This document shows, one piece after another, positions 1,380 through 41,855 of a stretch of DNA of 64,000 nucleotides. The translations under genes were made by a program, and so were the position numbers. The notes under the pieces are model-generated. The model had not been told where the DNA came from and did not search any database. It worked only from the letters and a program-made list of their open reading frames with translations. The stretch covers positions 1 through 64,000 of IMG/VR virus record IMGVR_UViG_3300050014_000823. One strand, written 5' to 3'. Within the stretch, counting starts at the first letter, position 1; each line of letters starts with the position of its first letter.

Positions 1380-1452
1380 GCTTCCGTGACTGAATGGTTA
1401 AGGTGTCAGACTCTAAATCTGATTTGTGCAGGTTCGATTCCTGTCGGAAGTA
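1380..1452 (+). tRNA. amber suppressor tRNA, anticodon CTA (1413-1415)
   Basis: acceptor GCTTCCG/CGGAAGT, D loop with GG, anticodon stem TCAGA/TCTGA with loop CTCTAAA, T arm GCAGG-TTCGATT-CCTGT, discriminator A; no encoded CCA. Confidence 0.92.
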
Positions 1453-1473
1453 CAAAAATAATTGATAATTTGC

Positions 1474-4000: not shown

Positions 4001-4563
4001 ATGGAACAACTTGTTGACTTAAATAATACGTTCTGGGATAGACTTCAAGAATACGTGACTGACTTACGTGTAGATGCACGATGGGTATTACGTGGACTTA
4101 CTGACAAAAAATCTTATGGTTCACTGAGAATCGTGTCACATCCGGACTTACCGCCTGGACAACTTCGTGCATTCTTCACGTATGTTATGACCATTAAACC
4201 TAAGACTAAGGAACAGAAACTCAAGGCGATTGAGGACTACCAAATGGAAATAACCGAAATGGAAGTTTACTCGATTAACGATGACATTAAGACCGAAACA
4301 CAGACTTATGTAGCACCATTTAAGGAACTTGAAGAAATGTTCGGTGTAAAAGTATTTGGAAAATGAAAAAAGAAATAGTAGAACTACTTGTCGATAACAC
4401 GGGTGTTTCAACAGAGCAAGCAACTATTATTGCAAGAAAAATAGATAGACTTTATAAGCAGAGTCATATAGACCTACTTAAAGAATTTATCGAACACCCA
4501 ACTAAGCCGGGTTATAAGCGACATGATATTCTCGATAGAATCAAAAAGTTAGAAAATAAATAA
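4001..4563 (+). other. two hypothetical CDS (4001-4366, 4363-4563)
   Basis: coupled ORFs. Confidence 0.65.
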
Positions 4564-29374: not shown

Positions 29375-29818
29375 ATGAATCTCAAGGGTCTTATAAAGGA
29401 AGAAATCAGCGCATATAATAATAGCGTATTCACGGACCTGCCCTTGGAATTATTTCAGAAACTCCGTATGCGAAAGTTCAGTGATGAGGCAAACCGCAGT
29501 CATATGAAACTCTATAAGGCAAAGGATGGCAAAGACTATATTATTTCTAAAGAGATTAATCGTGATGTATTCCGAGTTAGTACTCTTGACGGTGAACAAA
29601 TAGCAGTAGCAGTGTTTGATGACGATAACGCTGGTTATTTCACTGGCTATGAAACATCCCAGAGTATTATGGTACAGCCTGAGTATAGACGTTTAGGACT
29701 TGCTACTGCACTGACGGACTTCGCTGAGACAATCTACGGTAAACCCTACAGACCAACTAAGGTTCTGAGTGAACCTATGCAGGGATTCGTAAAGAATAGG
29801 TTCAATACGACTTCATAA
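29375..29818 (+). CDS. GNAT acetyltransferase-like protein with LIKEE N-terminus
   Basis: VQPEYRRLGLATAL acetyl-CoA binding motif A. Confidence 0.7.
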   Translation: MNLKGLIKEEISAYNNSVFTDLPLELFQKLRMRKFSDEANRSHMKLYKAKDGKDYIISKEINRDVFRVSTLDGEQIAVAVFDDDNAGYFTGYETSQSIMVQPEYRRLGLATALTDFAETIYGKPYRPTKVLSEPMQGFVKNRFNTTS

Positions 29819-30622: not shown

Positions 30623-30928
30623 GTCTTAATTTTTTTGGTTTATACTATGTCTGTTTGTGTCGTCTGATTCTTATACGTTGAAAAGTTACAAAATGTTTCA
30701 TTTTTTTCATTTATTTTTCATTTATTTTCACTTTTATTCACAACCTGGCACCAGGTGGGCGTTTGCGGTGATGGCATTCGTACATTGTTTTCCTTATATA
30801 TATAGGTGTGCTGATAGCTTGTTTAGAATCTGTCTAAATTGAGGGTAAAGTGTAACATTTTTTTTTATATCTCGTTAAAGGTAGTATATTTGACAACTGA
30901 ATTGAATGTTTAACTAATACATAAAGCT

Positions 30929-31495
30929 ATGAATGAAGTAACCAACAGAGCAACAGAATTAGAATTTAATGCAATTTATAAAGAGTTCAAACCGGCAATA
31001 GTTGCGCATTTGCGGACAAAAATCAAAAACGAGGAAGAGCGTGATGATATTGAAATGAGAGTATGGGGCAAACTTAATGAAAACCTACATACACACAATA
31101 TTGCCAAAGGTAAACTTAACACGTGGTTATTCACAATCGTAAAAAACGAAATCATTGATTACTTTCGTAGTGACAGGTATAAGAAACACGAAGCAATGAC
31201 AACCAAAGTGTCTGCAATGGTCAACGAAGAGGGTGTTGAGGCGTTTCAGTTTATCGGTGACAATACGGCAAGTACTGAAATCGAAAACAATCAGTTATCC
31301 GATAAAATACTCAACGCATTTGAAAAAATCAAACCTACCTACAAAGATATAGCAATACAGTATTTTCTTTATGAGAAGCAATACACTGAAATTGCGGATG
31401 CAATGTCCATACCATTAGGCACTGTAAAAGTGGCAATCATGAGAGCAAGAGAAGTACTGCAAAACAATCTTAAAGTCGAGTACGCAAGTTTATAA
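30929..31495 (+). CDS. ECF (group 4) RNA polymerase sigma factor
   Basis: region 2 TWLFTIVKNEIIDYFR and region 4 YTEIADAMSIPLGTVKVAIMRAREVL. Confidence 0.92.
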   Translation: MNEVTNRATELEFNAIYKEFKPAIVAHLRTKIKNEEERDDIEMRVWGKLNENLHTHNIAKGKLNTWLFTIVKNEIIDYFRSDRYKKHEAMTTKVSAMVNEEGVEAFQFIGDNTASTEIENNQLSDKILNAFEKIKPTYKDIAIQYFLYEKQYTEIADAMSIPLGTVKVAIMRAREVLQNNLKVEYASL

Positions 31496-31599
31496 TGTAC
31501 TCAAAAGCACTTAGGGCAATGTACAAAAATATATTGTCCTAAGTGTAACAAAAACCAGGAATTTACGTATAATCAATAGTAACCAAAACATATAAAGCT

Positions 31600-31854
31600 A
31601 TGGCAAAAGAAAAAATTACCCCACGTCCGCTTCCGGAAATCACTGCTGAAATCAGAAAAGATTGGAAACCAATGTACAGACCTGCACAGGCACACTTCGA
31701 AGCATTCGAGTATGCAGATAATGTCAACCAAATGTACGGCATGGACTCTGTAAAGAGTGAGATATTGTACTTTCTTGGCAATGCTCAGACTTGGAAAGGT
31801 GACGTTGCAAGACGCATAAAACTCGAACTCAAAGCACTCGTTGGCTTAAAGTAA
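31600..31854 (+). CDS. small conserved phage protein
   Basis: RPL.EI..EIRKDW...YFLGNAQTWKG..ARRIK.ELK; own promoter and terminator. Confidence 0.75.
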   Translation: MAKEKITPRPLPEITAEIRKDWKPMYRPAQAHFEAFEYADNVNQMYGMDSVKSEILYFLGNAQTWKGDVARRIKLELKALVGLK

Positions 31855-31956
31855 AACTAATGTTCATTGTACAAAAAGAGGGAATTATTTCCCTCTTTTT
31901 TGTAACATTTTCAGCGAATGTACGTATAATATAGAGTAACCAAAACAGAATGTACC

Positions 31957-32175
31957 ATGTCACACAGAAGTGCAGAATATCAAGCCGAAAGGTTAAGACG
32001 TACAACAGTACGCAAGGAGAGGCGCAAATCTGCAAGGCAAACCAAATATTGGCGGTATGGCAGACAATCAGAGGGTACTTGCCCGGATTGTGGCGGTCAA
32101 ATGTCTTGGTGCAGTTGTTGCCAAGTATGGAGCAAAAGTTGTTGTGTTGAATATGGTACTTGTCAATGTTCATAA
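31957..32175 (+). CDS. small basic Cys-rich protein
   Basis: CPDCGGQMSWCSCCQVWSKSCCVEYGTCQCS. Confidence 0.7.
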   Translation: MSHRSAEYQAERLRRTTVRKERRKSARQTKYWRYGRQSEGTCPDCGGQMSWCSCCQVWSKSCCVEYGTCQCS

Positions 32176-32181
32176 ATAAAC

Positions 32182-32238
32182 TGGGTGTTAGCGCAGTGGT
32201 AGAGCGAAATGTCGGGGGTTCGATTCCCTCACACCCTA
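32182..32238 (+). ncRNA. tRNA-like RNA lacking the anticodon arm
   Basis: GGGTGT/ACACCC acceptor, D arm GCGC-AGTGGTA-GAGC, only GAAATGTC before T arm GGGGG-TTCGATT-CCCTC. Confidence 0.75.
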
Positions 32239-32314
32239 CAAATATATTGTACAATAAGTGAAACATTTCTGTTGATTGTACGTATAATACTATGTAACCA
32301 AAACATATAAAGCT

Positions 32315-32656
32315 ATGGCAATGAAAATTTTCACACAGGTAATTATCAATGCTTTTAAAAAGCAGGGTAAGACAGGCAACAAATCAATGAAGGATATTTT
32401 TATCATCTGCAAACTGTTTAACCCCGGCGGTGCAGGTACATGGTATTTGTACGAACAGGAAGACGAGGACACGTTTTGGGCATTCGTGAACTTAGGTGAC
32501 GTTGTAATGTCCGAGTGTGGCACTGTATCAATGTCCGAGTTAATGTCTTACAGAGGTCCGTTTGGCTTAAAGATTGAACGTGACAAGTTTTTTGAGCCGT
32601 TCTCCATGACCTTAGAGGAAGTTTACAACAAGGTAAAAGCAGGACAGCACGTCTAA
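32315..32656 (+). CDS. DUF2958-like protein
   Basis: KLFNPGGAGTWYL.E...ECGTVSMSEL..RGPFGLKIERDKFF. Confidence 0.8.
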   Translation: MAMKIFTQVIINAFKKQGKTGNKSMKDIFIICKLFNPGGAGTWYLYEQEDEDTFWAFVNLGDVVMSECGTVSMSELMSYRGPFGLKIERDKFFEPFSMTLEEVYNKVKAGQHV

Positions 32657-32738
32657 AAATAAGTTGAAAATATGTCCCTCAGAGTGTAACATTTACGGGG
32701 TTTTTCGTATAATCACCTGTAACCAAAACACACAGACT

Positions 32739-33257
32739 ATGAATACTTATTTCACAAACGAATGTTTATCAATCTCCTTAGAGAGGCATAAAGATAATAC
32801 CTTAAGTCTTGAAATCGGTTCAGACTTTGGCAACCAAAGATATCACAAACAGCAACTACATGTATGTGAAAAACGTCTTGCAAGTGCTGTTGAAGGATTT
32901 TGGAAATCAACAAAAACCAAAAAACTTCAAGGTGTTCATGTTGGCTTCGGTGAAATCGACCATTATGACGACATGACTGACATATATCATACACCAACCG
33001 CCTTCATTAAAAGAGGCAAGAGAAAAGTAGAAACAAGTTGGAGAGAACACGGCAGTATACCAAAGGATTGGAGCATTAACCTACATGCGGCAATTGCTGA
33101 CACAACCACAATTAATCCCGTGCTTGAAGTCGTTAAGAATGCCATTGGCTTTTCTAAGTTCAAAGCAATTGAGAAGGAACTCATTAAAAAATTCCGTCCT
33201 GTATTGCAGAAGAAAAAAGAATATGGTAATTATTACAGTGAAAATTATGTAGACTAA
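32739..33257 (+). CDS. hypothetical protein
   Basis: ATG after promoter 32685 and TAACCAA leader. Confidence 0.7.
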   Translation: MNTYFTNECLSISLERHKDNTLSLEIGSDFGNQRYHKQQLHVCEKRLASAVEGFWKSTKTKKLQGVHVGFGEIDHYDDMTDIYHTPTAFIKRGKRKVETSWREHGSIPKDWSINLHAAIADTTTINPVLEVVKNAIGFSKFKAIEKELIKKFRPVLQKKKEYGNYYSENYVD

Positions 33258-33311
33258 CTGAAACATTTCCTCTGCAAATACGTATAATCAACTGTAACCA
33301 AACCAAAGACA

Positions 33312-33944
33312 ATGAAAAAATTAAGGATATTATTAGCATGTGAAGAAAGCCAAGCAGTAACAATAGCTTTCAGAAAACTTGGACATGAGGCTTACAGTTG
33401 TGACTTACTTGAATGTACAGGTGGTCACCCCGAATGGCACATACAAGGTGATGTAACTGTTGTACTTAAGCAACATTGGGACTTAATAATAGCATTCCCG
33501 CCATGCACACACTTAGCAGTAAGTGGCAACGCACACCGTGCTAAGAAACAGGCAGACGGACGTGAGGCAGAAGCAATAGCATTCTTTATGATGTTTGCCA
33601 ACCACGAATGTACGCACATAGCAATTGAGAACCCCGTAGGTATAATGTCCACTAAGTGGAGAAAGCCTAATCAGATTGTACAGCCGTGGCAGTTTGGACA
33701 ACCCGAAAGTAAGAAGACATGCTTATGGTTGAAAGGGTTACCAACATTGACTCACACCAATGTACTACCAAAACCCGCATGCGGATATTGGGACAACCAA
33801 ACATCTGATGGACAGAACAAACTCTTGGTTGACGGCAAATGGATAGCTTACAATGACCCACGGACACCCGCCTTAAGGTCAAAAACATATAAGGGAATTG
33901 CACAGGCAATGGCAAAGCAGTGGTCAGACTACCTAACAAAATAA
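33312..33944 (+). CDS. short phage-type DNA cytosine methyltransferase
   Basis: LLACEES, IAFPPCTHL, IENPVG, QPWQFG..ESKKTCLWL, RSKTY.GIA.AMA.QW. Confidence 0.78.
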   Translation: MKKLRILLACEESQAVTIAFRKLGHEAYSCDLLECTGGHPEWHIQGDVTVVLKQHWDLIIAFPPCTHLAVSGNAHRAKKQADGREAEAIAFFMMFANHECTHIAIENPVGIMSTKWRKPNQIVQPWQFGQPESKKTCLWLKGLPTLTHTNVLPKPACGYWDNQTSDGQNKLLVDGKWIAYNDPRTPALRSKTYKGIAQAMAKQWSDYLTK

Positions 33945-34144
33945 TTTGTCTTGTTTTGGTTTATACTCAGAAAGATGGGTGAACCGTTTAATCAGAACGG
34001 CACCCATTTTTTATTTTATGCATATGATGCAAAAATCCTGGCATTTCTGTAACATTTTTCTCAGTTTTTCGTATAATCATTCATAAGACACACACAGACT
34101 AACAGTCTTAAACCAAACAGAGTATAAACTTAAAACCAAACAAA

Positions 34145-35002
34145 ATGAAGACAAAAACATTATCACTTAGCAGAACAGATTTTCCAGTTGTTAGTTCACT
34201 TGACAACCTTGAAGTTGGAAGAATTTACACAACATTCAAACCGGAAATTATTAAGTCCCTGGAATTTAACAGAGGCGCAAAAGACGGATTTCTTCCTGAA
34301 AGAGTTGCAGCTTTACAGGCAAAGTTTGATACAGGTTTATTTTATATGAACGTCTGTCATGTTCTTGTCAACAGTAAAGGAAAAGCAATTGACGGAAACA
34401 ACAGAAAGAAAATGCTTTCAAACAACAAACAGGGTGTCAATTTTATGATTACAGCACAGCCGGAATTTAATCTTGACAATGAATCTGAAATTCTCAACAA
34501 CGTATCTGAATACAATTCGGTGAACTCAGCATGGAACGGCAAAGATGCTTATGAATCAGCACTCGCATTCAATGAAGCTGCCGCAGTCGCAATCGACAAA
34601 CTAAAAACCTGGGTTGAAAACACCTACGGCATTAATGCAGACATTTTCACACCGAGCAGACTTATTGCAATCGTTACCAAATTCAAACAGGGACTGAACG
34701 GTAAAGTACAGCCAAGACGTGCATATTGTAACAAAGAAACTGCAAGTGTACTCGAATCACCGGAATTTAAAGAACACCTATTGTTCTTAGTGAATGTTAT
34801 ACAGTTTGTACAGTCAAACAACAATTCAATAACAGCTTTTGATGTGGTTCGTTGCTTACTTCCTATAATGTGGAAGAAAGAGTTAAGTCAGAAAGTTGTT
34901 CTCGCAAACGTTAAAAAACGTGGTTTCAAAGGTATGGACAATACCAAAATGGCAGGTGTTAAGGCAAGAGTTACCGAGATACTGAAAATAGGAAATGTCT
35001 AA
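34145..35002 (+). CDS. ParB-N-like domain protein
   Basis: EFNRG...VLVNSKGKAIDGNNR. Confidence 0.5.
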   Translation: MKTKTLSLSRTDFPVVSSLDNLEVGRIYTTFKPEIIKSLEFNRGAKDGFLPERVAALQAKFDTGLFYMNVCHVLVNSKGKAIDGNNRKKMLSNNKQGVNFMITAQPEFNLDNESEILNNVSEYNSVNSAWNGKDAYESALAFNEAAAVAIDKLKTWVENTYGINADIFTPSRLIAIVTKFKQGLNGKVQPRRAYCNKETASVLESPEFKEHLLFLVNVIQFVQSNNNSITAFDVVRCLLPIMWKKELSQKVVLANVKKRGFKGMDNTKMAGVKARVTEILKIGNV

Positions 35003-35064
35003 TGTACAGATAGTTGTGGGTGGCATTGTCCACCCACTATTTATTAACCTTAAAACCACAGACA

Positions 35065-35547
35065 ATGAATACAGAAATACTTATTGAAAGATACAGACGA
35101 AGTAATGAGCATGAGCATATAGTAATGTCCGCAACAATCAGAACATTAATGCCAACAATTTTTGACCAAAACAATACTGAAACCATTGTTCAGCAGAGAA
35201 TAAAAAGAACCAAAGGTCCAACACTTTTCCTTGATGCATCAAATGGAAATCTTACTGCAACAGGTCAGCATTATCGTAAAACTGAAATGAGAGTTGGAAA
35301 TATCTTTGTTGAAGTAAAACATCAAAACACTGTCAGCAACATACAGGAATCTGTTATGGGTGAAATTGCAAGAGCAGAAAACATTAAAGGTCAATACTGG
35401 CTTGTTCTTCTTGGTGATGCATATAGAAGACCTATAATAATTTCTGAATTTGTAAGGATGATTTTCAAATACAAATTACAAAATAAGGTGAGAATGTTTT
35501 TAAGTGTTGAGGAATATATTCTTGCATTACAGGACGAAAATTTGTAA
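35065..35547 (+). CDS. possible PD-(D/E)XK nuclease-fold protein
   Basis: IFVEVKHQNT..WLVLLGDAY. Confidence 0.4.
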   Translation: MNTEILIERYRRSNEHEHIVMSATIRTLMPTIFDQNNTETIVQQRIKRTKGPTLFLDASNGNLTATGQHYRKTEMRVGNIFVEVKHQNTVSNIQESVMGEIARAENIKGQYWLVLLGDAYRRPIIISEFVRMIFKYKLQNKVRMFLSVEEYILALQDENL

Positions 35548-35597
35548 CATTTTCCGGGCAAATACGTATAATCATCAGTAACCAACACAGACATAAA

Positions 35598-37068
35598 ATG
35601 AAATCAGAAATTACAGTACGGTCACAGGGAATAAAAGGCGGTGATGCCAAATTCGAAGATAAAGGTTCAGCTACACTCTATCTCACAGACAGAGGACAGA
35701 AAAGAACTGACTTGGTAATTGACGTTGATTCATTCCGGGGTTCCGGGACGACATATAAAAGACGGGAAAAGACTTTAATAAATATTGACTTTGAGAACAC
35801 GCCTATATTTCATGGCACGGTTGAAGAACTTGTTGCAAGGCTGAAAAAACCCGCAACTGAATTCAAACAGACAGTTGAATTCAAATCACGTGGATTAGTT
35901 CTTGGTAATCTTTTCATGGGTGGTGAAGGTGCATATAAAGCAAAGACACTGAAAGCCAATAGTAAAAAAGAACTGATTGAAAAAGCTGTTGATATGTTGC
36001 TCGATGGCAGTCTTGATGGTGGCATGGGTTTTGACGGTTTACTTGGAGCAATGCTTGAGATAACAACTGTTACTACGTTCATTGTCAATGACAAATGTTT
36101 TCGTAATGAAGAAACTGAAAGCGTATATATTGGCGACTTAACAGCCGAACAGATGCAATTTCTTGAAGAAACAGGAATGTATGTGTAACATTCTCCCGGC
36201 AAATACGTATAATCTATTGAACCAAAACGACAAAACAATGAAGACATTTTCAATACAATTCGAAGAATTAAAGGAGCAGGCAATTGATAAAATCCGGGAC
36301 TTAATAAAGTCCAAAGGTAAAGAATCGAAACACAGCAACAAAAGATGTTTGAAAGTCACAAAGGATGACCTACAATTTAATCTTGGCGGTGGAAGATATC
36401 TCACTGAGATAAATGCAGAAACCCTGGTTGACAATGATGGATATGAATACAATTTTTATGTCCTAAGTACAGAAGACTTTTTATCAGTAACCGATTATCT
36501 GATAGCACAATATAAATAATATAGTTTGGTTACTATGCTTTTGTTTGGTTACAAAAGAAAACCCCGTGAAATTTGAAACATTTCCGGGGTTTTTACGTAT
36601 AATCATTTGTAACCAATACTTATAAAGCTATGGCAAAGAAGAAACTTTATTACACAGTCGAAAAAGAGATTGACGACAATGGTGGTGATGATACCCTCAC
36701 AGGTAACAAGACCATCACAGTTTACGAAATCGTAAACAACGAACCTAAAAAACTCACAGACATTGAGTGCGGAACAGAAGAGAACAGCAAAGATAAAATC
36801 AATGAGTATCTTGAAGACAATGGTTATGGTGATGATGAATTTACACTAATACTTCTGTAATATGAGTAAAGCAACCTTTGTAAAAGAAATAACAGTTGAA
36901 GACCTTAATGGTAATCCTGTTGAAATGGAAGTCTATCAGCATGAGAACGGTGGTTTATTCGCAATAGACAGTTCATTCGTTGACCAAGTACTTGGTGATG
37001 AATTTGACAGAGTAGTAATTCCCGACCCATTTAATGAAGGCTTCATGCTGGAATTAGAAGAAAATTAA
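35598..37068 (+). other. four small early-type CDS (35598-36188, 36238-36519, 36630-36860, 36862-37068), the last two very acidic
   Basis: cassettes preceded by ECF-type promoters. Confidence 0.7.
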
Positions 37069-37146
37069 CGACTGAACCCTGTAACACAGGGTTTTTTGTT
37101 GTAAATTAGAATCATATTCACTAATTTTGTATATTAATTTAAATAT

Positions 37147-37467
37147 ATGCAAACGAAAGAGAATAAAAAACAATGGAAGATTAATAATCCTGGAAAGGTA
37201 AAATTATATAATAAGAAGTCTGGATTAAAAAGATTCTATGGTATTACTGTAGAAGAATATGATTTACTGTTTAATAAACAGGAAGGTAAATGTTTAATAT
37301 GTGATAAGCATCAAAGTGAATTTAAGCGTGCATTTGATGTTGACCATAATCATAAGACAGGAATAATCAGAGGATTATTATGTGGTGGTTGCAACCTTCT
37401 TATTGGCAATGCTAAAGAAGATGTTAATATATTGGCACAAGCAATTAATTATTTAAATAATAATTAA
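37147..37467 (+). mobile_element. endonuclease VII-like homing endonuclease
   Basis: YGIT.EEY..L..KQ.G.C.IC...VDHNH.TG.IRGLLC..CN. Confidence 0.88.
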
Positions 37468-37523
37468 GTTGTAACATTTACAGGGTTTTTTCGTATAATC
37501 ACTATAACCAATACATAAAAGAC

Positions 37524-38263
37524 ATGGCAACATTTAAAGTAGTACACGAAATCGAAGTCGAAGCTAAGAACCCATTAGAAGCTGCAAAGACAGTACAGGA
37601 ATGGTTTGATGATGCTGACACCAAGTGGCAGTTCTACGTACAGAAAGAAGGTCAGAAGAAAATAGTCAGTGTAGACCTTAATGAAGACGATAGCGCAGCA
37701 GTTCTTCCTGTTGGTGCATATGAACCTATGATTCAACCCCTAATACAACTATAAGATGAACGGAAAAAAGAGAATCAATAAGGAAGCTACAGTACGGAAT
37801 ATCCGGAAAGCTGCAGAAGGCAACATAAGAGACATGGATGCCTTTGAAAAACAAATGGAGAACGAACAGGATATCCTGGATGCCTGCATCTTATGGGAAG
37901 CCGAAGTCGTATACCTGTAAAAATAAATCGAAAATAATTGCCCGGAAGTGTAACATTTTCGGGCAGTTTTCGTATAATCATATATAAGAAAGGGGTTCGT
38001 GCCACGCCAGCACGCAGAGGGTAGACTCCAACCTACCTTATACTCTGAGTTTAGACTCATTCTAAATAAGACCAAAGTGTAACAAAAACCCAGGTTTTTC
38101 GTATAATACCTGTAACCAACAATTAAAGCTATGATTATACTCGAAGGTAAGAACCCAGATTTTTTTGCAGTATGGTCGTGTGACACACAGTGCTACACAG
38201 TCTATTACAAGAATCAAGTACTGATAAAAAAAGACAGATTTGCTGACATTAAATCTTATCTGA
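37524..38263 (+). other. small CDS 37524-37754, about 37757-37920 and 38131-38263
   Basis: ORFs following promoters 37470 and 38078. Confidence 0.55.
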
Positions 38264-38322
38264 ATTGAAACATTTTCAAGTTTTTTTCGTATAATCTATT
38301 GTAAACCAAAACACACACAGAC

Positions 38323-39147
38323 ATGATGAAATTTACAACTATTGCAGATGCACGCAAACAGACAGGATTAAGTTACCTTGGTGGTATTGCCACAAGTGCA
38401 AAGATAAGCCACAGTAAACAATACAGTCATCAGTATACATATGGTATGTATCTTGCACCCGCTAAATTAAGTGGTCACAACGTTTGTAGCCACAGTACAC
38501 CCGAATGCCGTATGGGTTGTCTCAATACTTCGGGACGTGCAGGAATTGAGGAATTTTCGGGTATCACAAAGATAGCTGATTGCCGTATTAAGAAAACACA
38601 GTTGTTTTTTGACGAAACAGCATTTTTTATGCAGTGGCTGATTGCCGAAATTAAACAGGCACAGGCAAAAGCAGTCAGAGACAACTATTTCTTCTCTGTA
38701 AGGCTGAATGCAACATCAGACATTAATTGGGCAAACGTCTTGGTTGACGGTCAGAACATTTTTCAGATATTTCCACAGGTAAGTTTTTATGACTATACCA
38801 AAAATCATTTGAAGTTTGAAAACAAACCTTTGAACTATCACCTTACCTATTCTTACACAGGTCGCAATTGGGACAAGTGCATTGAATTACTTTCACGTGG
38901 TTTCAATATTGCAATGGTATTCAATGTAAAACACGAAAGTATGTCACCTGCAATGTACAAAGGTTATGCAGTGGTCAACGGTGACCTTACCGATTACCGC
39001 ATTGATGATGCCAAAGGTATTATAATAGGTTTGAAGTGGAAACGCATTGCAAACCGTATCAATGAGAAGAAAATTCTCAACAGTTGCTTCGTTGTCAATG
39101 TACAGTCTACAGTACCTAATGTACAACAACTGCAGTTAGTTGCATAA
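38323..39147 (+). CDS. gene product 88 (GP88)-like protein
   Basis: NVC..ST..C..GCL..SGR, VRLNATSDI.W, FYDYTK, NYHLTYS, GD.TD.R..D. Confidence 0.75.
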   Translation: MMKFTTIADARKQTGLSYLGGIATSAKISHSKQYSHQYTYGMYLAPAKLSGHNVCSHSTPECRMGCLNTSGRAGIEEFSGITKIADCRIKKTQLFFDETAFFMQWLIAEIKQAQAKAVRDNYFFSVRLNATSDINWANVLVDGQNIFQIFPQVSFYDYTKNHLKFENKPLNYHLTYSYTGRNWDKCIELLSRGFNIAMVFNVKHESMSPAMYKGYAVVNGDLTDYRIDDAKGIIIGLKWKRIANRINEKKILNSCFVVNVQSTVPNVQQLQLVA

Positions 39148-39201
39148 TTAATGCATATAATGCGGGGAATAAATGTTTAATCACTTCAAATAATGCGGTG
39201 A

Positions 39202-39609
39202 TTAAACATTCAATTCTAAATAAGAAATTGCTGATTTTAATGTTTCAATATTGTCATTACAATTACCTAAAAGAATATTACAATTTGGACAGAGTAAACC
39301 TCTAACACTTCCAGTAACATGATTATGGTCAATAAATATATGTCGTTTTCTTTCAAATTGTTTATTACATATTTTACATTTACCGTTCTGAGCATTGTAC
39401 ATATTAATAAAATCATCATGAGTTATATTATACTTACCATATTTTTTATTAAGTTTTTCACCAGGATTATTAGCGTATCTTATTCTATGACCAGCATTAC
39501 CACATTTTTTACAATAGTGGTCACGACCATATTTACCATTTATTCTTTTATGAAATTCATCAAGTGGTTTAGGAACTTTACATTTCGAGCAAATTTTCAA
39601 TTCTTCCAT
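39202..39609 (-). mobile_element. endonuclease VII-like homing endonuclease
   Basis: CSKC..CKKC N-terminus, QNGKCKIC...IDHNH.TG.VRGLLCPNCN; start after GTATTTAT at 39625-39632. Confidence 0.88.
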
Positions 39610-39712
39610 AATGTACAATTTAATATAAATACAAAGATAAAATGTTTTCTCCGCATTTTGTAACATTCTCCGCATATTTACATATAATCACTATAAACCA
39701 ATACTTAAGACA

Positions 39713-41855
39713 ATGACAATCCAGGAATTTTTAGCAGACAATACAATCACAGATGAAAACATAATAATGGATGCATTATGCATACCAAAGTCAGCCAGAG
39801 GCGTATTCAAAGTACGACCATTGTACCCTATCGGTGTAGGTCAATGGAAGACAGATAAAATGCCGCCTCAGTGGTCAAACAATGACCAATTCACAATGGG
39901 AACAGTTTACCCTATCTATGACAATGAAGGTATCTTTGTAATAGGTAAAGACGGACAGGGTAAAAAGTTCAATGAGAACGACTGGAAAGAAGTAGTTTGG
40001 TTCTAAAGTAATACTTAAGATAATGACAGCTAAAAAACAGATAACCAAGAAGTTAAAGCCAACCAAATTATGGGTTGGTCACATACCTGGAATCTATGGT
40101 TACGGTGTTATGGTCGTTGAATTTTCAGAAGACCAAGCCAGGAAATCTTTGAAACGTGCATTTGCACAGGCAAAGAAATACAATGACGGTCAAATGAGTT
40201 TTGCCAATGCCTTCGACCATTGGGGTGGCAGAATATTCGAAATCGAAACAGGTAGATATTATGGTGATGATTTCAGTGAATAATTGAAACCTTATTTGAG
40301 TTTGTACGTATAATACCTATAACCAATACACACACTAAATATGAAGAAATTATTAATCACACTCATTGTACAGGACGGTGAAAACCAACACAAACACAGA
40401 ATCCTGCACACCACTAACGGAAATGATATACACTTCGCAGCTCAGAGATATGCTGCAGGATTCTACGGTGATGATGAACCTGAACACCTGTTATCATGGT
40501 GGCAATTCCAGGCAGGTAGCATAGCAGTTGAAGTTGAGAATGTACGTGAACTCTCCGACTATGAGTATCAGCTATTGTCCGACCTCTTTGGTGGCATTGT
40601 ACGCAAACCATACTTTGAGATTGTACAGGCAGGTTTCAATGAAGGTCTTCAGAGAGAAGAAGTACAGATTCATTGTGGCGAAAATGGTAACTTGATGATT
40701 GCCAAAACTCCAGAAGGCTTCGTTGTTGACATATACAATCAGGATGAGAATATTGATTCTCTGACAGTCTGGGAAGACGACCTGTCACCACTGGAGATTG
40801 AAATCGACCCTAATGTACACGGGACTAAAATAAAAGAATTTCTTGACACTCAGGGACAAAAACATTCAGCTATAACAGCAGAACTTGGCTTACACCCTGC
40901 ACACAACATGAGTGATGAGATATTGATGGATGACTATTTCTACCTTGAAGGTAAAAAAGAGTGGTATCCAAAGAACAGTTCAATGTACGGTGATACTGAA
41001 CAGGCAATTGCAAACTTCTTGCAGGAAAATCGTGACGACTACTAAAAATAAACTTGCCGGGACTGAAATAATTCCCGGCATTTTTCGTATAATCATCATT
41101 AACCAACACACACTGAAATGAAAACAAATTGGAGCACACCTAAAACAAATATATTCGCAGGAATGTCAGACCTTCGTAAATGCCTTGCAGGTGGTAATAA
41201 AGCCAGACTTATAAGAGCACGCAATGAAGACTGTGAATTTCCAATAATGATTAAGAATGTGAATTCTGATTTCAGAAGCTATACCTTTAGTATTGGCTAT
41301 GCCAGCAGTATAAATAAAGTAAAGGCAGACCCAAATTTAAGTGAATTCGAAAAGCACCTTACATTGAACTATGTCTCTGTCTTCGGCAGTCAGGAAGCAA
41401 AGGACAGATATTATGAGACAGGCATATGTACTGTAGACAACTTTAAGAACATGGGTTGTAGTCATCTGGTACATGTCGATGACATGATTAAATTCCTGGA
41501 AGACACTAATGACCCAAGGGCAGCTTTATATAAAAGACAATACCGTGCCAATGAACAGGTAAATGATGTACAACACTTCTTTGACTTCTACAGATGTGAC
41601 AAAGGCAGTCCTCACACTATTAAGAAGTTCAAGAGAAAACTCTGGGTTGTTGATATGCTGGATAAAGATATGCCAGCACCCAGAACACCAATTCTTGTGT
41701 ATATCCTAAATGTACTGGCTTATCCCCTTAAGTACATACCCAACAAGTCAGTACTACGTATGCCAGAATATAAATGCGTAACATTCAGAATTGGTGCAGT
41801 GACAAATGGCTTCGCAGTAGAGTTTCATCTCCCAAAGAAATTCAGTTTTAAATAA
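39713..41855 (+). other. four early-type hypothetical CDS (39713-40006, 40023-40283, 40341-41045 acidic, 41118-41855)
   Basis: preceded by promoters 39659, 40285, 41064. Confidence 0.7.

What the first reader, a model, noticed from the sequence alone, without database searches (positions are those of the whole stretch)
32182..32240. tRNA with the entire anticodon arm cleanly missing
Seen: intact acceptor (T1xT72 mismatch, A73), canonical D and T arms, and only 8 nt (GAAATGTC) between them. It lies in an ECF-promoter cassette after a Cys-rich gene. The preserved stems argue against random decay. Inference: a tRNA mimic (decoy for anticodon nucleases, aaRS or uncharged-tRNA sensors) or an RNase P/Z processing signal.
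Basis: partly seen in the sequence, partly recalled or inferred. Interest (0 to 1): 0.62.

Follow-up and report, generated by a model that had tools for sequence, protein, structure and literature searches.

The report
Anticodon-less tRNA paired with zinc protein
A giant phage carries a tRNA-shaped gene with the whole anticodon arm missing; the same armless RNA sits beside a small zinc-binding protein gene in dozens of uncultured phages, so it is a conserved, undescribed two-part module and not a broken tRNA.

Summary
Window 32182-32238 (+) is a 57-nt tRNA-like gene with a 7-bp acceptor stem (U1xU72, A73), a D arm, a T arm and 8 nt where 23 would normally lie. It passes Rfam's tRNA threshold; ARAGORN does not call it.

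It is not a unique deletion. It is the RNA half of a conserved phage module. The 72-aa Cys-rich gene 6 nt upstream (31957-32175) belongs to a family found almost only in phage contigs (143 clusters, no Pfam, PDB or fold relative). In loci fetched by the protein alone, 61 of 76 distinct members have an armless tRNA on the same strand, 1-22 nt after the stop or 6-23 nt before the start. No member had a full tRNA in place of the armless one.

Across 56 distinct RNAs, 97% of stem positions pair, 14 of 17 pairs covary, and the 15:48 tertiary pair covaries. Members with the RNA have a basic N-terminal helix (net charge about +8). The 15 without it have acidic or zinc-ribbon N-termini.

About 45% of the RNAs carry G3:U70 plus A73, the alanine identity. 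The window's branch instead has a weak 1:72 pair, G2:C71 and A73.

Best reading: a tRNA-mimic ribonucleoprotein matured like a tRNA. Its target is unknown. Rivals are a cis mRNA-end processing signal and a tmRNA-like or decoy role.

The parts
31902..31946 (+). Phage promoter and leader of the module cassette: GTAACA (31902-31907), 17 nt, TATAAT (31925-31930), then the conserved leader GTAACCAAAAC
   Evidence: Sigma-70-like scan. The motif CGTATAAT-N6-GTAACCAA is found about 10 times within 0-2 mismatches on the + strand between 31.5 and 41 kb, against 2.7 expected for the whole pattern search. Function as a promoter is inferred.
31957..32175 (+). Gene for a 72-aa protein: a basic N-terminal helix (residues 6-34) and a C-terminal eight-cysteine, probably two-zinc, domain that ends at the C-terminus (...YGTCQCS)
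   Evidence: ORF and translation. 19 close homologues and 143 clusters at 50% identity. Invariant C42, C45, C52, C55, C69, C71 and near-invariant C62, C63. AlphaFold model with pLDDT 92. No Pfam, PHROG, PDB or fold relative. Synonymous codon changes among relatives, including TCA to AGT for Ser.
32176..32181 (+). 6-nt A/T-rich spacer between the stop codon and the RNA 5' end, containing the expected RNase P cleavage site (32181/32182)
   Evidence: Sequence. In the family the spacer is 1-22 nt, median 7. Cleavage is inferred, not shown.
32182..32238 (+). Anticodon-arm-less tRNA-like RNA, 57 nt: acceptor stem (U1xU72, G2:C71, G3:C70), D arm, 8-nt linker, T arm, discriminator A73
   Evidence: Rfam tRNA 36.9 bits. 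Armless model R1 63.4 bits. Covariation in 56 homologues. Among close relatives the conserved block ends at A73-C74.
32260..32301 (+). Promoter and leader of the next cassette (DUF2958 gene 32315-32656). It marks the downstream limit of the module; there is no terminator between the RNA and this promoter.
   Evidence: Motif match at 32281-32301. No terminator-like site in 31500-32800. DUF2958 by Pfam.
30929..31495 (+). Phage-encoded sigma factor with sigma-70 regions 2 and 4_2, as in ECF-type sigmas. It probably reads the repeated promoters. This is context, not part of the module.
   Evidence: Pfam Sigma70_r2 (5e-9) and Sigma70_r4_2 (1e-7). A homologue lies in the relatives L218/L219.

Best explanation
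The element is the RNA half of a self-contained phage module made of a small zinc protein and a tRNA lacking its anticodon arm. Shown: the two genes lie on one strand a few bases apart, in either order, in many unrelated phage contigs. The RNA keeps a 7-bp acceptor stem, discriminator A73, D arm, T arm and the tertiary core (U8, A14, G18G19, A21, the 15:48 pair, the T loop) under strong covariation. The anticodon stem-loop is replaced by about 2 nt. The protein family splits into members with a basic N-terminal helix, all of which have the RNA, and members with acidic or zinc-ribbon N-termini, none of which do. Inferred: in the window both genes are transcribed from the promoter at about 31902-31930. 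The RNA is cut out by host RNase P at its 5' end and by RNase Z or exonucleases at its 3' end, then CCA-tailed; all these enzymes read only the acceptor/T-arm stack and the elbow. The result would be a stable L-shaped RNA of about 60 nt. The protein's 30-residue basic helix binds it, giving a ribonucleoprotein that presents a tRNA acceptor end and elbow with protein in place of the anticodon arm. This particle would engage a factor that reads tRNA from the acceptor side, either the translation apparatus or a tRNA-directed host defence enzyme. In nearly half the family the RNA carries G3:U70 plus A73 and should be charged with alanine. In the window's branch the stem has a weak or mismatched 1:72 pair, G2:C71 and A73. 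That is initiator-like in its open 1:72 pair, so if charged or peptidylated it would be a poor substrate for EF-Tu and peptidyl-tRNA hydrolase.
For: Linkage, tested with loci fetched by the protein alone: 3 of 3 protein look-ups, viral contigs and 80 metagenome loci. Of 76 distinct proteins with enough flank, 39 have the RNA 1-22 nt downstream (one at 288 nt), 22 have it 6-23 nt upstream, and 15 have none. The converse also holds: 12 of 47 distinct armless tRNAs found by an RNA-only pattern lie 3-11 nt after a family member. No other neighbouring gene is shared. Structure: 97.2% of cells paired, 14 of 17 pairs with changes on both sides, 15:48 as G:C 33 and A:U 17; slid controls give 34-55% paired. 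Among close relatives conservation is confined to the 57 nt plus C74. Net charge of the N-terminal region is about +8 with the RNA and -5.2 without it, with no overlap (minimum +3 against maximum 0), p = 1.4e-9. G3:U70 occurs in 25 of 56 RNAs while positions 4-7 vary freely; G2:C71 in 55 of 56; A73 in 57 of 61. The only true tRNA in the window (1380-1453) has the same U72-A73-CAAA 3' context, which fits a shared maturation route. That RNase P, CCA-adding enzyme and AlaRS act without an anticodon arm is established knowledge (minihelix substrates; t-elements, PMC5499578).
Against: No expression, processing or binding data exist. No cultured phage carries the module and the host is unknown. The charge-RNA correlation could rest on few evolutionary events: a tree of the 30-aa domain gives 8 changes of state but only 1 supported independent pair. 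The window's RNA lacks G3:U70, so no aminoacyl-tRNA synthetase can be assigned to it. The closest relatives by the downstream gene (L218/L219, L220) lack the module, so it is dispensable. Adjacency to ORF ends is also what a cis processing signal would show.
Confidence: 0.5

Rival explanations
1. It is a purely cis-acting punctuation signal, like a plant mitochondrial t-element or the mascRNA element of MALAT1. RNase P or RNase Z cuts at the tRNA-like fold to set the 3' end (or, in the upstream type, the 5' end) of the small protein's mRNA. The released RNA has no function of its own.
For: The RNA lies 1-22 nt after the stop or 6-23 nt before the start codon. In the window it occupies the place where neighbouring cassettes have a terminator hairpin, and no terminator follows it. 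t-elements that lack the anticodon arm are known end-formation signals (PMC5499578). Other armless tRNA families sit in intergenic gaps of operons, upstream of terminase and portal genes.
Against: A processing signal does not need G3:U70, yet that pair is kept in 25 of 56 RNAs while the rest of the stem varies. The full tertiary core is conserved as in working tRNAs. One protein family accounts for about a quarter of the armless tRNAs found by pattern. Presence of the RNA tracks the protein's N-terminal chemistry.
Confidence: 0.2
2. It is a minimal tmRNA analogue: a tRNA-like domain without a message, whose own small protein plays the part of SmpB. The particle enters stalled ribosomes, or it blocks host trans-translation by competing with tmRNA.
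For: tmRNA's tRNA-like domain also lacks an anticodon arm, and SmpB fills that space (PMC4131195). Versions with the tRNA-like domain only are known in jakobid mitochondria, with G.U at position 3 and A73 (PMC3590771). One is listed for mycobacteriophage DS6A, and a similar molecule inhibits tmRNA (PMC4131195). 20 of 22 RNAs of the upstream type have G1:C72, G2:C71, G3:U70 and A73. The partner protein has a long basic helix and a compact domain.
Against: The window's RNA has G3:C70 and U1xU72, so alanine charging is not expected. All these RNAs have a canonical D stem, which tmRNA lacks. Rfam assigns the element to tRNA and the gathering scan of the window returned no tmRNA family. The protein has no detectable similarity to SmpB. 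With no message there is no way to finish rescue.
Confidence: 0.1
3. It is a decoy or sponge for a host defence enzyme that attacks the tRNA acceptor end. Examples are toxins that pyrophosphorylate or extend the CCA end, acetylate aminoacyl-tRNA, or cleave the acceptor stem. The protein would stabilise or assist the decoy.
For: The module is restricted to phage-type contigs: only 7 hits, all in metagenome-assembled bins, among 185,579 species genomes. It is small, has its own promoter, lies among accessory genes and is absent from near relatives, as counter-defence genes typically are. Only the acceptor half is kept, with identity-like features. Phage tRNAs are known to counter tRNA-targeting defences (PMC13728456).
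Against: No defence system is known to be countered this way; a late-2026 review lists none. This reading does not explain why the same cysteine domain exists without the RNA. There is no host or defence context to examine.
Confidence: 0.12
4. It is a decaying tRNA pseudogene, or an assembly artefact, that lost its anticodon arm in one deletion.
For: The closest relatives by the downstream gene lack it. ARAGORN does not call it. Its folding energy is not exceptional.
Against: 56 distinct homologous RNAs from many independent assemblies have the same architecture, with compensatory changes and no full-length counterpart. A syntenic relative (L229) has the module after the same upstream gene, with four compensatory stem changes against the window.
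Confidence: 0.02
5. It is a decoy for anticodon nucleases or for sensors of uncharged tRNA.
For: tRNA-directed defences and phage tRNA countermeasures are well documented.
Against: Those nucleases recognise and cut the anticodon loop or stem, which is exactly the part missing here. Ribosome-bound sensors need codon-anticodon pairing.
Confidence: 0.03

Closest known systems
tmRNA versions reduced to the tRNA-like domain (jakobid mitochondrial tmRNA; 'TLD only' entry for mycobacteriophage DS6A)
   Same: A small RNA with acceptor stem and T arm but no anticodon arm and no message. G3:U70 and A73 occur in about 45% of the family. One phage example and an inhibitory effect on tmRNA are reported (PMC3590771, PMC4131195).
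   Different: The RNAs here have a full canonical D arm and 15:48 pair. The window's copy lacks G3:U70. The partner is a new eight-cysteine protein, not SmpB. My model finds only a weak, non-alanine hit in DS6A (20.5 bits), and Rfam finds nothing there at its thresholds.
Plant mitochondrial t-elements and the mascRNA element of MALAT1
   Same: tRNA-like folds next to mRNA ends, some lacking the anticodon arm, read by RNase P and RNase Z; mascRNA is about 60 nt and CCA-tailed (PMC5499578; the mascRNA details are from my own knowledge).
   Different: Those elements are degenerate and gene-unspecific. Here the tertiary core and identity-like acceptor features are conserved and the RNA is tied to one protein family. 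Rfam's mascRNA model scores 12.9 bits against a threshold of 42.5.
Bacterial and phage Y RNAs (YrlA) with Ro60/Rsr
   Same: A non-coding tRNA mimic with D and T arms, encoded next to its protein partner, also in phages, and a substrate of tRNA enzymes (PMC4201824).
   Different: In YrlA the tRNA-like domain sits on a long Ro-binding stem and the ends lie elsewhere. No Ro60 (TROVE) gene is near the module and there is no Rfam match.
3' tRNA-like structures of plant RNA viruses (TYMV, BMV)
   Same: A tRNA mimic directly after the last ORF that can be CCA-tailed and aminoacylated (my own knowledge).
   Different: Those have pseudoknotted acceptor stems and, in TYMV, an anticodon. They are in RNA genomes and have no dedicated small protein partner.
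Armless mitochondrial tRNAs of nematodes and mites
   Same: tRNAs that have lost a whole arm yet remain functional.
   Different: They lose the D and/or T arm and always keep the anticodon arm, because they still decode. Here the loss is the reverse.

Membership tests
Canonical tRNA (Rfam RF00005) | 7-bp acceptor stem plus discriminator base | tested here: met
   6 of 7 pairs form, with U1xU72 mismatched; A73 is present.
Canonical tRNA (Rfam RF00005) | D arm and T arm with conserved loop bases (G18G19, TTCGA) | tested here: met
   D loop AGTGGTA and T loop TTCGATT. The D stem has one G.A mismatch.
Canonical tRNA (Rfam RF00005) | Anticodon stem-loop with a 7-nt loop carrying an anticodon | tested here: not met
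   17 model positions are replaced by 2 nt. ARAGORN makes no call.
Canonical tRNA (Rfam RF00005) | Score above Rfam's gathering threshold | tested here: met
   36.9 bits against 29.
tmRNA reduced to the tRNA-like domain | G3:U70 and A73 (alanine identity) | tested here: not met
   The window has G3:C70 with A73. The feature is met in 25 of 56 related RNAs.
tmRNA reduced to the tRNA-like domain | D-loop analogue without a D stem | tested here: not met
   A canonical 4-bp D stem is conserved, 97.8% paired.
tmRNA reduced to the tRNA-like domain | SmpB as partner | tested here: not met
   The adjacent protein matches no Pfam family and shows no fold similarity to SmpB. Use of host SmpB cannot be tested here.
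t-element / mascRNA-type processing signal | tRNA-like fold abutting an mRNA end | tested here: met
   6 nt after the stop codon in the window; 1-22 nt or 6-23 nt in the family.
t-element / mascRNA-type processing signal | Cleavage by RNase P and RNase Z in vivo | not testable with these tools
   This needs RNA-end mapping or in vitro cleavage.
t-element / mascRNA-type processing signal | Match to Rfam's mascRNA-menRNA model | tested here: not met
   12.9 bits against a threshold of 42.5.
Y RNA (YrlA) with Ro60 | A Ro60/TROVE gene next to the RNA and a long Ro-binding stem | tested here: not met
   No such gene among the neighbours. The 5' and 3' ends form a plain acceptor stem. No Rfam match.
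Prophage attachment-site tRNA fragment | Only the 3' part of a tRNA, next to an integrase | tested here: not met
   Both halves of the acceptor stem are present. No gene other than the module is shared among the loci, and the window genes scanned include no integrase.

The most novel reading that the evidence does not exclude
The module encodes a minimal tRNA-mimic ribonucleoprotein in which a two-zinc protein with a 30-residue basic helix stands in for the anticodon arm. It would be a phage-made analogue of tmRNA-SmpB that enters the ribosome, or captures acceptor-end enzymes, without any codon. One lineage would be charged with alanine. The other, including the window's copy, has an initiator-like open 1:72 pair that would escape EF-Tu and peptidyl-tRNA hydrolase.
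Probability: 0.15. Interest if true: 0.9.

Novelty: new variant of a known kind. Interest (0 to 1): 0.8.

Why it matters
tRNA mimics are rare and have been informative: tmRNA, Y RNAs, viral tRNA-like ends, mascRNA. This one is defined by the reverse of every known arm loss. The decoding arm is gone, and everything that tRNA-processing enzymes, CCA-adding enzyme, AlaRS and EF-Tu read is kept. It also comes with a dedicated protein of unknown fold.

Standard tRNA finders miss it. ARAGORN called none of the copies checked. That probably explains why a class present in at least 100 independent contigs has gone unreported.

If the particle acts on ribosomes, on acceptor-end enzymes or on tRNA-directed defences, it would be a new way for phages to manipulate translation. 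It would also be a compact natural scaffold for studying recognition of tRNA by its acceptor half alone.

The wider scan shows that phage genomes hold many tRNA-likes with missing or miniature anticodon arms, some at fixed places beside terminase and portal genes. This is a survey target in its own right.

Tried and rejected
- **Annotated phage genomes.** DNA of 30900-33300 and two family proteins found no match in the GenBank phage collection.
- **Protein family assignment.** There were no Pfam, PHROG, PDB-sequence, Foldseek or VIA-align relatives. A weak resemblance to ribosomal protein bL32 (E = 0.14) did not recur with a cleaner profile, so I dropped it.
- **Degraded HNH endonuclease.** Relatives L218/L219 carry an HNH gene in that slot, so I compared it with the Cys-rich ORF. 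BLASTP gave E = 0.17. Rejected.
- **Thermodynamic test.** The folding z-score is -0.27. It is uninformative for a 57-nt tRNA-like RNA.
- **Third conserved gene.** All-against-all comparison of ORFs around 23 module loci found none.
- **Independence of the charge-RNA correlation.** The 30-aa domain gives too weak a tree: 8 changes of state, only 1 supported independent pair. Inconclusive.
- **Comparison with phage DS6A, listed in the literature as 'TLD only'.** It gave one weak armless-like hit (20.5 bits) and no Rfam match. Not pursued.
- **Amber-codon recoding in the window,** suggested by the CTA tRNA. There is no sign of it.
- **Technical failure.** The search for related loci on the broad alignment A2 failed for lack of a conserved stretch. 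It was repeated with A3.
- A Pfam survey of about 150 neighbouring ORFs, to avoid an oversized call. No complex prediction, because the tool takes no RNA.

Full report
**1. The observation**

Window 32182-32238 (+) reads as a tRNA from which positions 27-43 have been removed. It has these parts:
- a 7-nt acceptor strand, then U8 and A9
- a D stem of GCGC paired with GAGC, with one G.A mismatch
- the D loop AGTGGTA
- the 8-nt linker GAAATGTC
- a 5-bp T stem and the T loop TTCGATT
- the complementary acceptor strand and A73

Position 1:72 is U.U. Rfam's tRNA model scores it 36.9 bits against a gathering score of 29, and the alignment shows 17 anticodon-arm positions replaced by 2 nt. ARAGORN finds only the true tRNA at 1380-1453. 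Folding energy alone is unremarkable (z = -0.27), so the argument has to be comparative. The window is the first 64 kb of a 299-kb IMG/VR contig, so the source is a jumbo phage.

**2. Armless tRNAs recur in phage contigs**

I scanned IMG/VR for a common D-arm motif and a common T-arm motif separated by only 6-14 nt. A normal tRNA has 25-26 nt there.
- 66 hits (47 distinct sequences) passed my filter: at least 6 of 7 acceptor pairs in the correct register and at least 4 of 5 T-stem pairs. They span many different acceptor-stem sequences.
- Gap lengths peak at 12 nt. The counts for 10, 11, 12, 13 and 14 nt are 11, 22, 37, 23 and 12.
In its sample, gaps of 15-20 nt were few (20 of 110). Gaps of 21-23 nt were many, and these are tRNA-likes with miniature anticodon hairpins.
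- ARAGORN called none of the armless copies in 60 loci. About half of them stand alone and the rest lie in tRNA arrays.

**3. The window's copy belongs to a two-gene module**

Among the pattern hits, a subset lay 3-11 nt downstream of small same-strand ORFs. These ORFs turned out to be homologous to the window's Cys-rich ORF at 31957-32175. That makes 12 of the 47 distinct armless RNAs.

The protein has 19 close homologues and 143 clusters at 50% identity among 1.8 billion representatives. The cysteine domain is always at the extreme C-terminus.

I then fetched loci using the protein alone, which is an independent test of linkage.
- **Protein look-ups:** three look-ups returned five loci, and all five have an armless tRNA 3-15 nt after the gene. 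Their T arms would not have matched my original pattern.
- **Viral contigs:** 19 loci.
- **Metagenome contigs:** 80 loci.

| Group (76 distinct proteins with enough flank) | Count | Position of the RNA |
|---|---|---|
| RNA downstream of the stop codon | 39 | median 7 nt, range 1-22, one at 288 |
| RNA upstream of the start codon | 22 | median 10 nt, range 6-23 |
| No RNA | 15 | none |

No member had a full-length tRNA in place of the armless one. One locus, L313, has a 90-nt tRNA-like match just upstream of the gene in addition to the armless RNA downstream. No other gene is shared among the loci.

A 51-kb relative (L229, the same contig as L039) has the module after the same 81-aa upstream gene as the window. 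Its stems differ from the window's by four compensatory changes. Other relatives, identified by the downstream DUF2958 gene, lack the module: L218 and L219 carry an HNH endonuclease gene in that slot, and L220 has an unrelated gene upstream. The module is therefore mobile or dispensable.

Only 7 hits, all in metagenome-assembled bins, occur among 185,579 species genomes. None occurs in GenBank phages.

**4. The RNA is under selection as a tRNA-shaped molecule**

These counts come from the 56 distinct RNAs fetched through the protein, so the set was not chosen for pairing.
- 97.2% of stem cells pair, against 34-55% when partners are slid by 1-3 columns.
- 14 of 17 pairs show changes on both sides.
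- No shuffle out of 500 reaches the observed values.
- The tertiary 15:48 pair covaries: G:C in 33, A:U in 17.
- U8, A14 and A21, and the T-loop bases T54, T55 and A58, are invariant. G18, G19, C56 and G57 are conserved in at least 90% of sequences.

Among close relatives of the window, conservation is confined to the 57 nt plus C74. It collapses after that until the next promoter motif.

The acceptor stems fall into two kinds.
- **Upstream type:** 20 of 22 have G1:C72, G2:C71, G3:U70 and A73, while positions 4-7 vary freely. This is the alanine identity set. Over all 56 RNAs the 3:70 pair is G:U in 25.
- **Downstream type, including the window:** most begin with U1 paired to A72 or facing U72. 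They continue G2:C71, then C3:G70 or G3:C70, then G4:C69 and A73. Two copies have C1xA72 with G2:C71 and C3:G70.

From my own knowledge, the C1xA72 pattern is that of bacterial initiator tRNA, where the open 1:72 pair is a determinant for formylation and an anti-determinant for EF-Tu and peptidyl-tRNA hydrolase. G2:C71 occurs in 55 of 56 RNAs and A73 in 57 of 61.

**5. The protein**

With a 106-sequence alignment, AlphaFold gives pLDDT 92. The model is a single long helix (residues 6-34) followed by a compact cysteine knot. Six cysteines are invariant and two nearly so, which suggests two Zn(Cys)4 sites. Nothing in Pfam, PHROGs, PDB sequences, Foldseek or VIA-align matches.

The N-terminal 35 residues have a mean net charge of +8.0 (RNA downstream) and +8.2 (RNA upstream), with a minimum of +3. 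In members without the RNA the mean is -5.2 with a maximum of 0; these have acidic or CxxC zinc-ribbon N-termini. The ranges do not overlap, and Mann-Whitney gives p = 1.4e-9.

One caveat applies. The domain is too short for a reliable tree, so the number of independent events behind this correlation lies somewhere between 1 and about 8.

**6. Expression context in the window**

A sigma-70 family gene with regions 2 and 4_2, as in ECF-type sigmas, lies at 30929-31495. A promoter/leader motif recurs about 10 times on the + strand between 31.5 and 41 kb. One copy sits 27 nt upstream of the Cys-rich ORF and the next begins 22 nt after the RNA. No terminator lies between them. The RNA is therefore most likely co-transcribed with the protein gene. 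The window's true tRNA has the same U72-A73-CAAA 3' context as the armless RNA, which suggests the same 3' maturation.

**7. Interpretation**

*Shown:* a conserved, phage-restricted, two-gene module whose RNA keeps every tRNA feature except the anticodon arm.

*Inferred from established enzymology:* RNase P, RNase Z, CCA-adding enzyme, EF-Tu and AlaRS read only the acceptor/T-arm stack and the elbow. The RNA should therefore be matured like a tRNA, and copies with G3:U70 should be charged with alanine.

*Inferred from co-occurrence:* the basic helix binds the RNA, giving a particle in which protein replaces the anticodon arm.

The target is open. It could be the ribosome and trans-translation, an acceptor-end enzyme, or a tRNA-directed defence toxin. 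I rate this ribonucleoprotein reading at 0.5.

The main rival, at 0.2, is a purely cis signal for mRNA end formation, like plant mitochondrial t-elements, some of which also lack the anticodon arm (PMC5499578). Position supports it. So does the fact that other armless families lie just upstream of terminase and portal genes. It does not explain G3:U70, the intact tertiary core or the protein specificity.

More specific readings are a minimal tmRNA analogue and an acceptor-end decoy. Precedents for the first are jakobid mitochondria (PMC3590771) and the 'TLD only' entry for phage DS6A, whose like inhibits tmRNA (PMC4131195). For the window's copy the tmRNA reading is weakened by the absence of G3:U70 and by the canonical D stem. 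Decay, and a decoy for anticodon nucleases, are effectively excluded.

**8. Novelty**

They found no description of phage-encoded tRNAs without an anticodon arm, or of this protein family. A late-2026 review of phage countermeasures lists only full tRNAs.

The RNA is a new variant within the known kind 'tRNA mimics'. Its pairing with a dedicated eight-cysteine protein has no described counterpart.

Noticed in passing
window 1380-1453 (+): A full tRNA with anticodon CTA (amber suppressor type; ARAGORN labels it Pyl). It has G1.U72, A73 and the same CAAA trailer as the armless RNA. TAG ends only 4 of 85 stop-to-stop ORFs of at least 120 codons, but letting TAG be read as sense does not lengthen ORFs more than chance would, so there is no sign of recoding in this window.
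   Followed up: partly
window 30929-31495 and about 31545-41106 (+): A phage-encoded sigma factor (regions 2 and 4_2, as in ECF-type sigmas) is followed by about 10 small gene cassettes. Each starts with the same promoter/leader motif: GTAACA, 17 nt, TATAAT, 6 nt, GTAACCAA. This looks like a sigma-dependent block of accessory genes.
   Followed up: partly
L218 and L219, 3533-3949: In relatives of the window phage (76% identity in the downstream DUF2958 gene), the slot that holds the module in the window holds an HNH endonuclease gene instead. The slot appears to be a hot spot for mobile cassettes.
   Followed up: partly
L078 1921-1978, L055 7165-7223, L047 1899-1955, L001 1986-2043: Other armless tRNA families, unrelated to the Cys-rich protein, sit 21-64 nt upstream of terminase small-subunit, terminase large-subunit or portal genes. 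One family (acceptor ATCCCCT) occurs in about 20 contigs. These may be processing signals in the packaging operon.
   Followed up: partly
L107-L216 (for example L111 6717-6758, L110 3009-3050): Many viral contigs carry tRNA-likes whose anticodon arm is shrunk to a 4-bp stem with a 4-6-nt loop (21-23 nt between D and T arms instead of 25-26). ARAGORN reports some such genes with 2-nt 'anticodons'. This is a second class of non-decoding tRNA-likes.
   Followed up: no
L004, L026, L028, L030, L034, L037, L043, L046, L049, L077, L083, L106: A different recurrent RNA has a perfect T arm enclosed by a GGTAG...CTACC stem (GGTAGAGCTGGTGC...GGTTCGATTCC...GCTACC). It has no acceptor or D arm. Rfam does not match it at gathering thresholds. 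Glutamine-II riboswitches, typical of cyanobacteria and cyanophages, lie in three of these loci.
   Followed up: partly
L221 631-6008: This module-bearing contig also has several full tRNAs, a YqeY-domain gene, and short tRNA-like matches of 36-45 nt (1724-1765, 2858-2902, 4270-4305). These may be further truncated tRNA mimics or fragments.
   Followed up: no
window 29375-29818; L225 3576-4076 (-): GNAT acetyltransferase genes lie near the module in two loci, 2.1 kb upstream in the window and about 290 nt downstream in L225. GNAT toxins that acetylate aminoacyl-tRNA exist, but two cases may be coincidence.
   Followed up: no
L332 (Mycobacterium phage DS6A) 36362-36417 (-): A weak armless-tRNA-like match (20.5 bits) lies between gp50 and gp51 of phage DS6A, the phage listed in the literature as carrying a 'TLD only' tmRNA. 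Its acceptor stem lacks G3:U70, and Rfam reports nothing in this genome at its thresholds.
   Followed up: partly
L313 1108-1197 and 1426-1486: One module locus has a 90-nt tRNA-like match immediately upstream of the Cys-rich gene as well as the armless RNA downstream.
   Followed up: no
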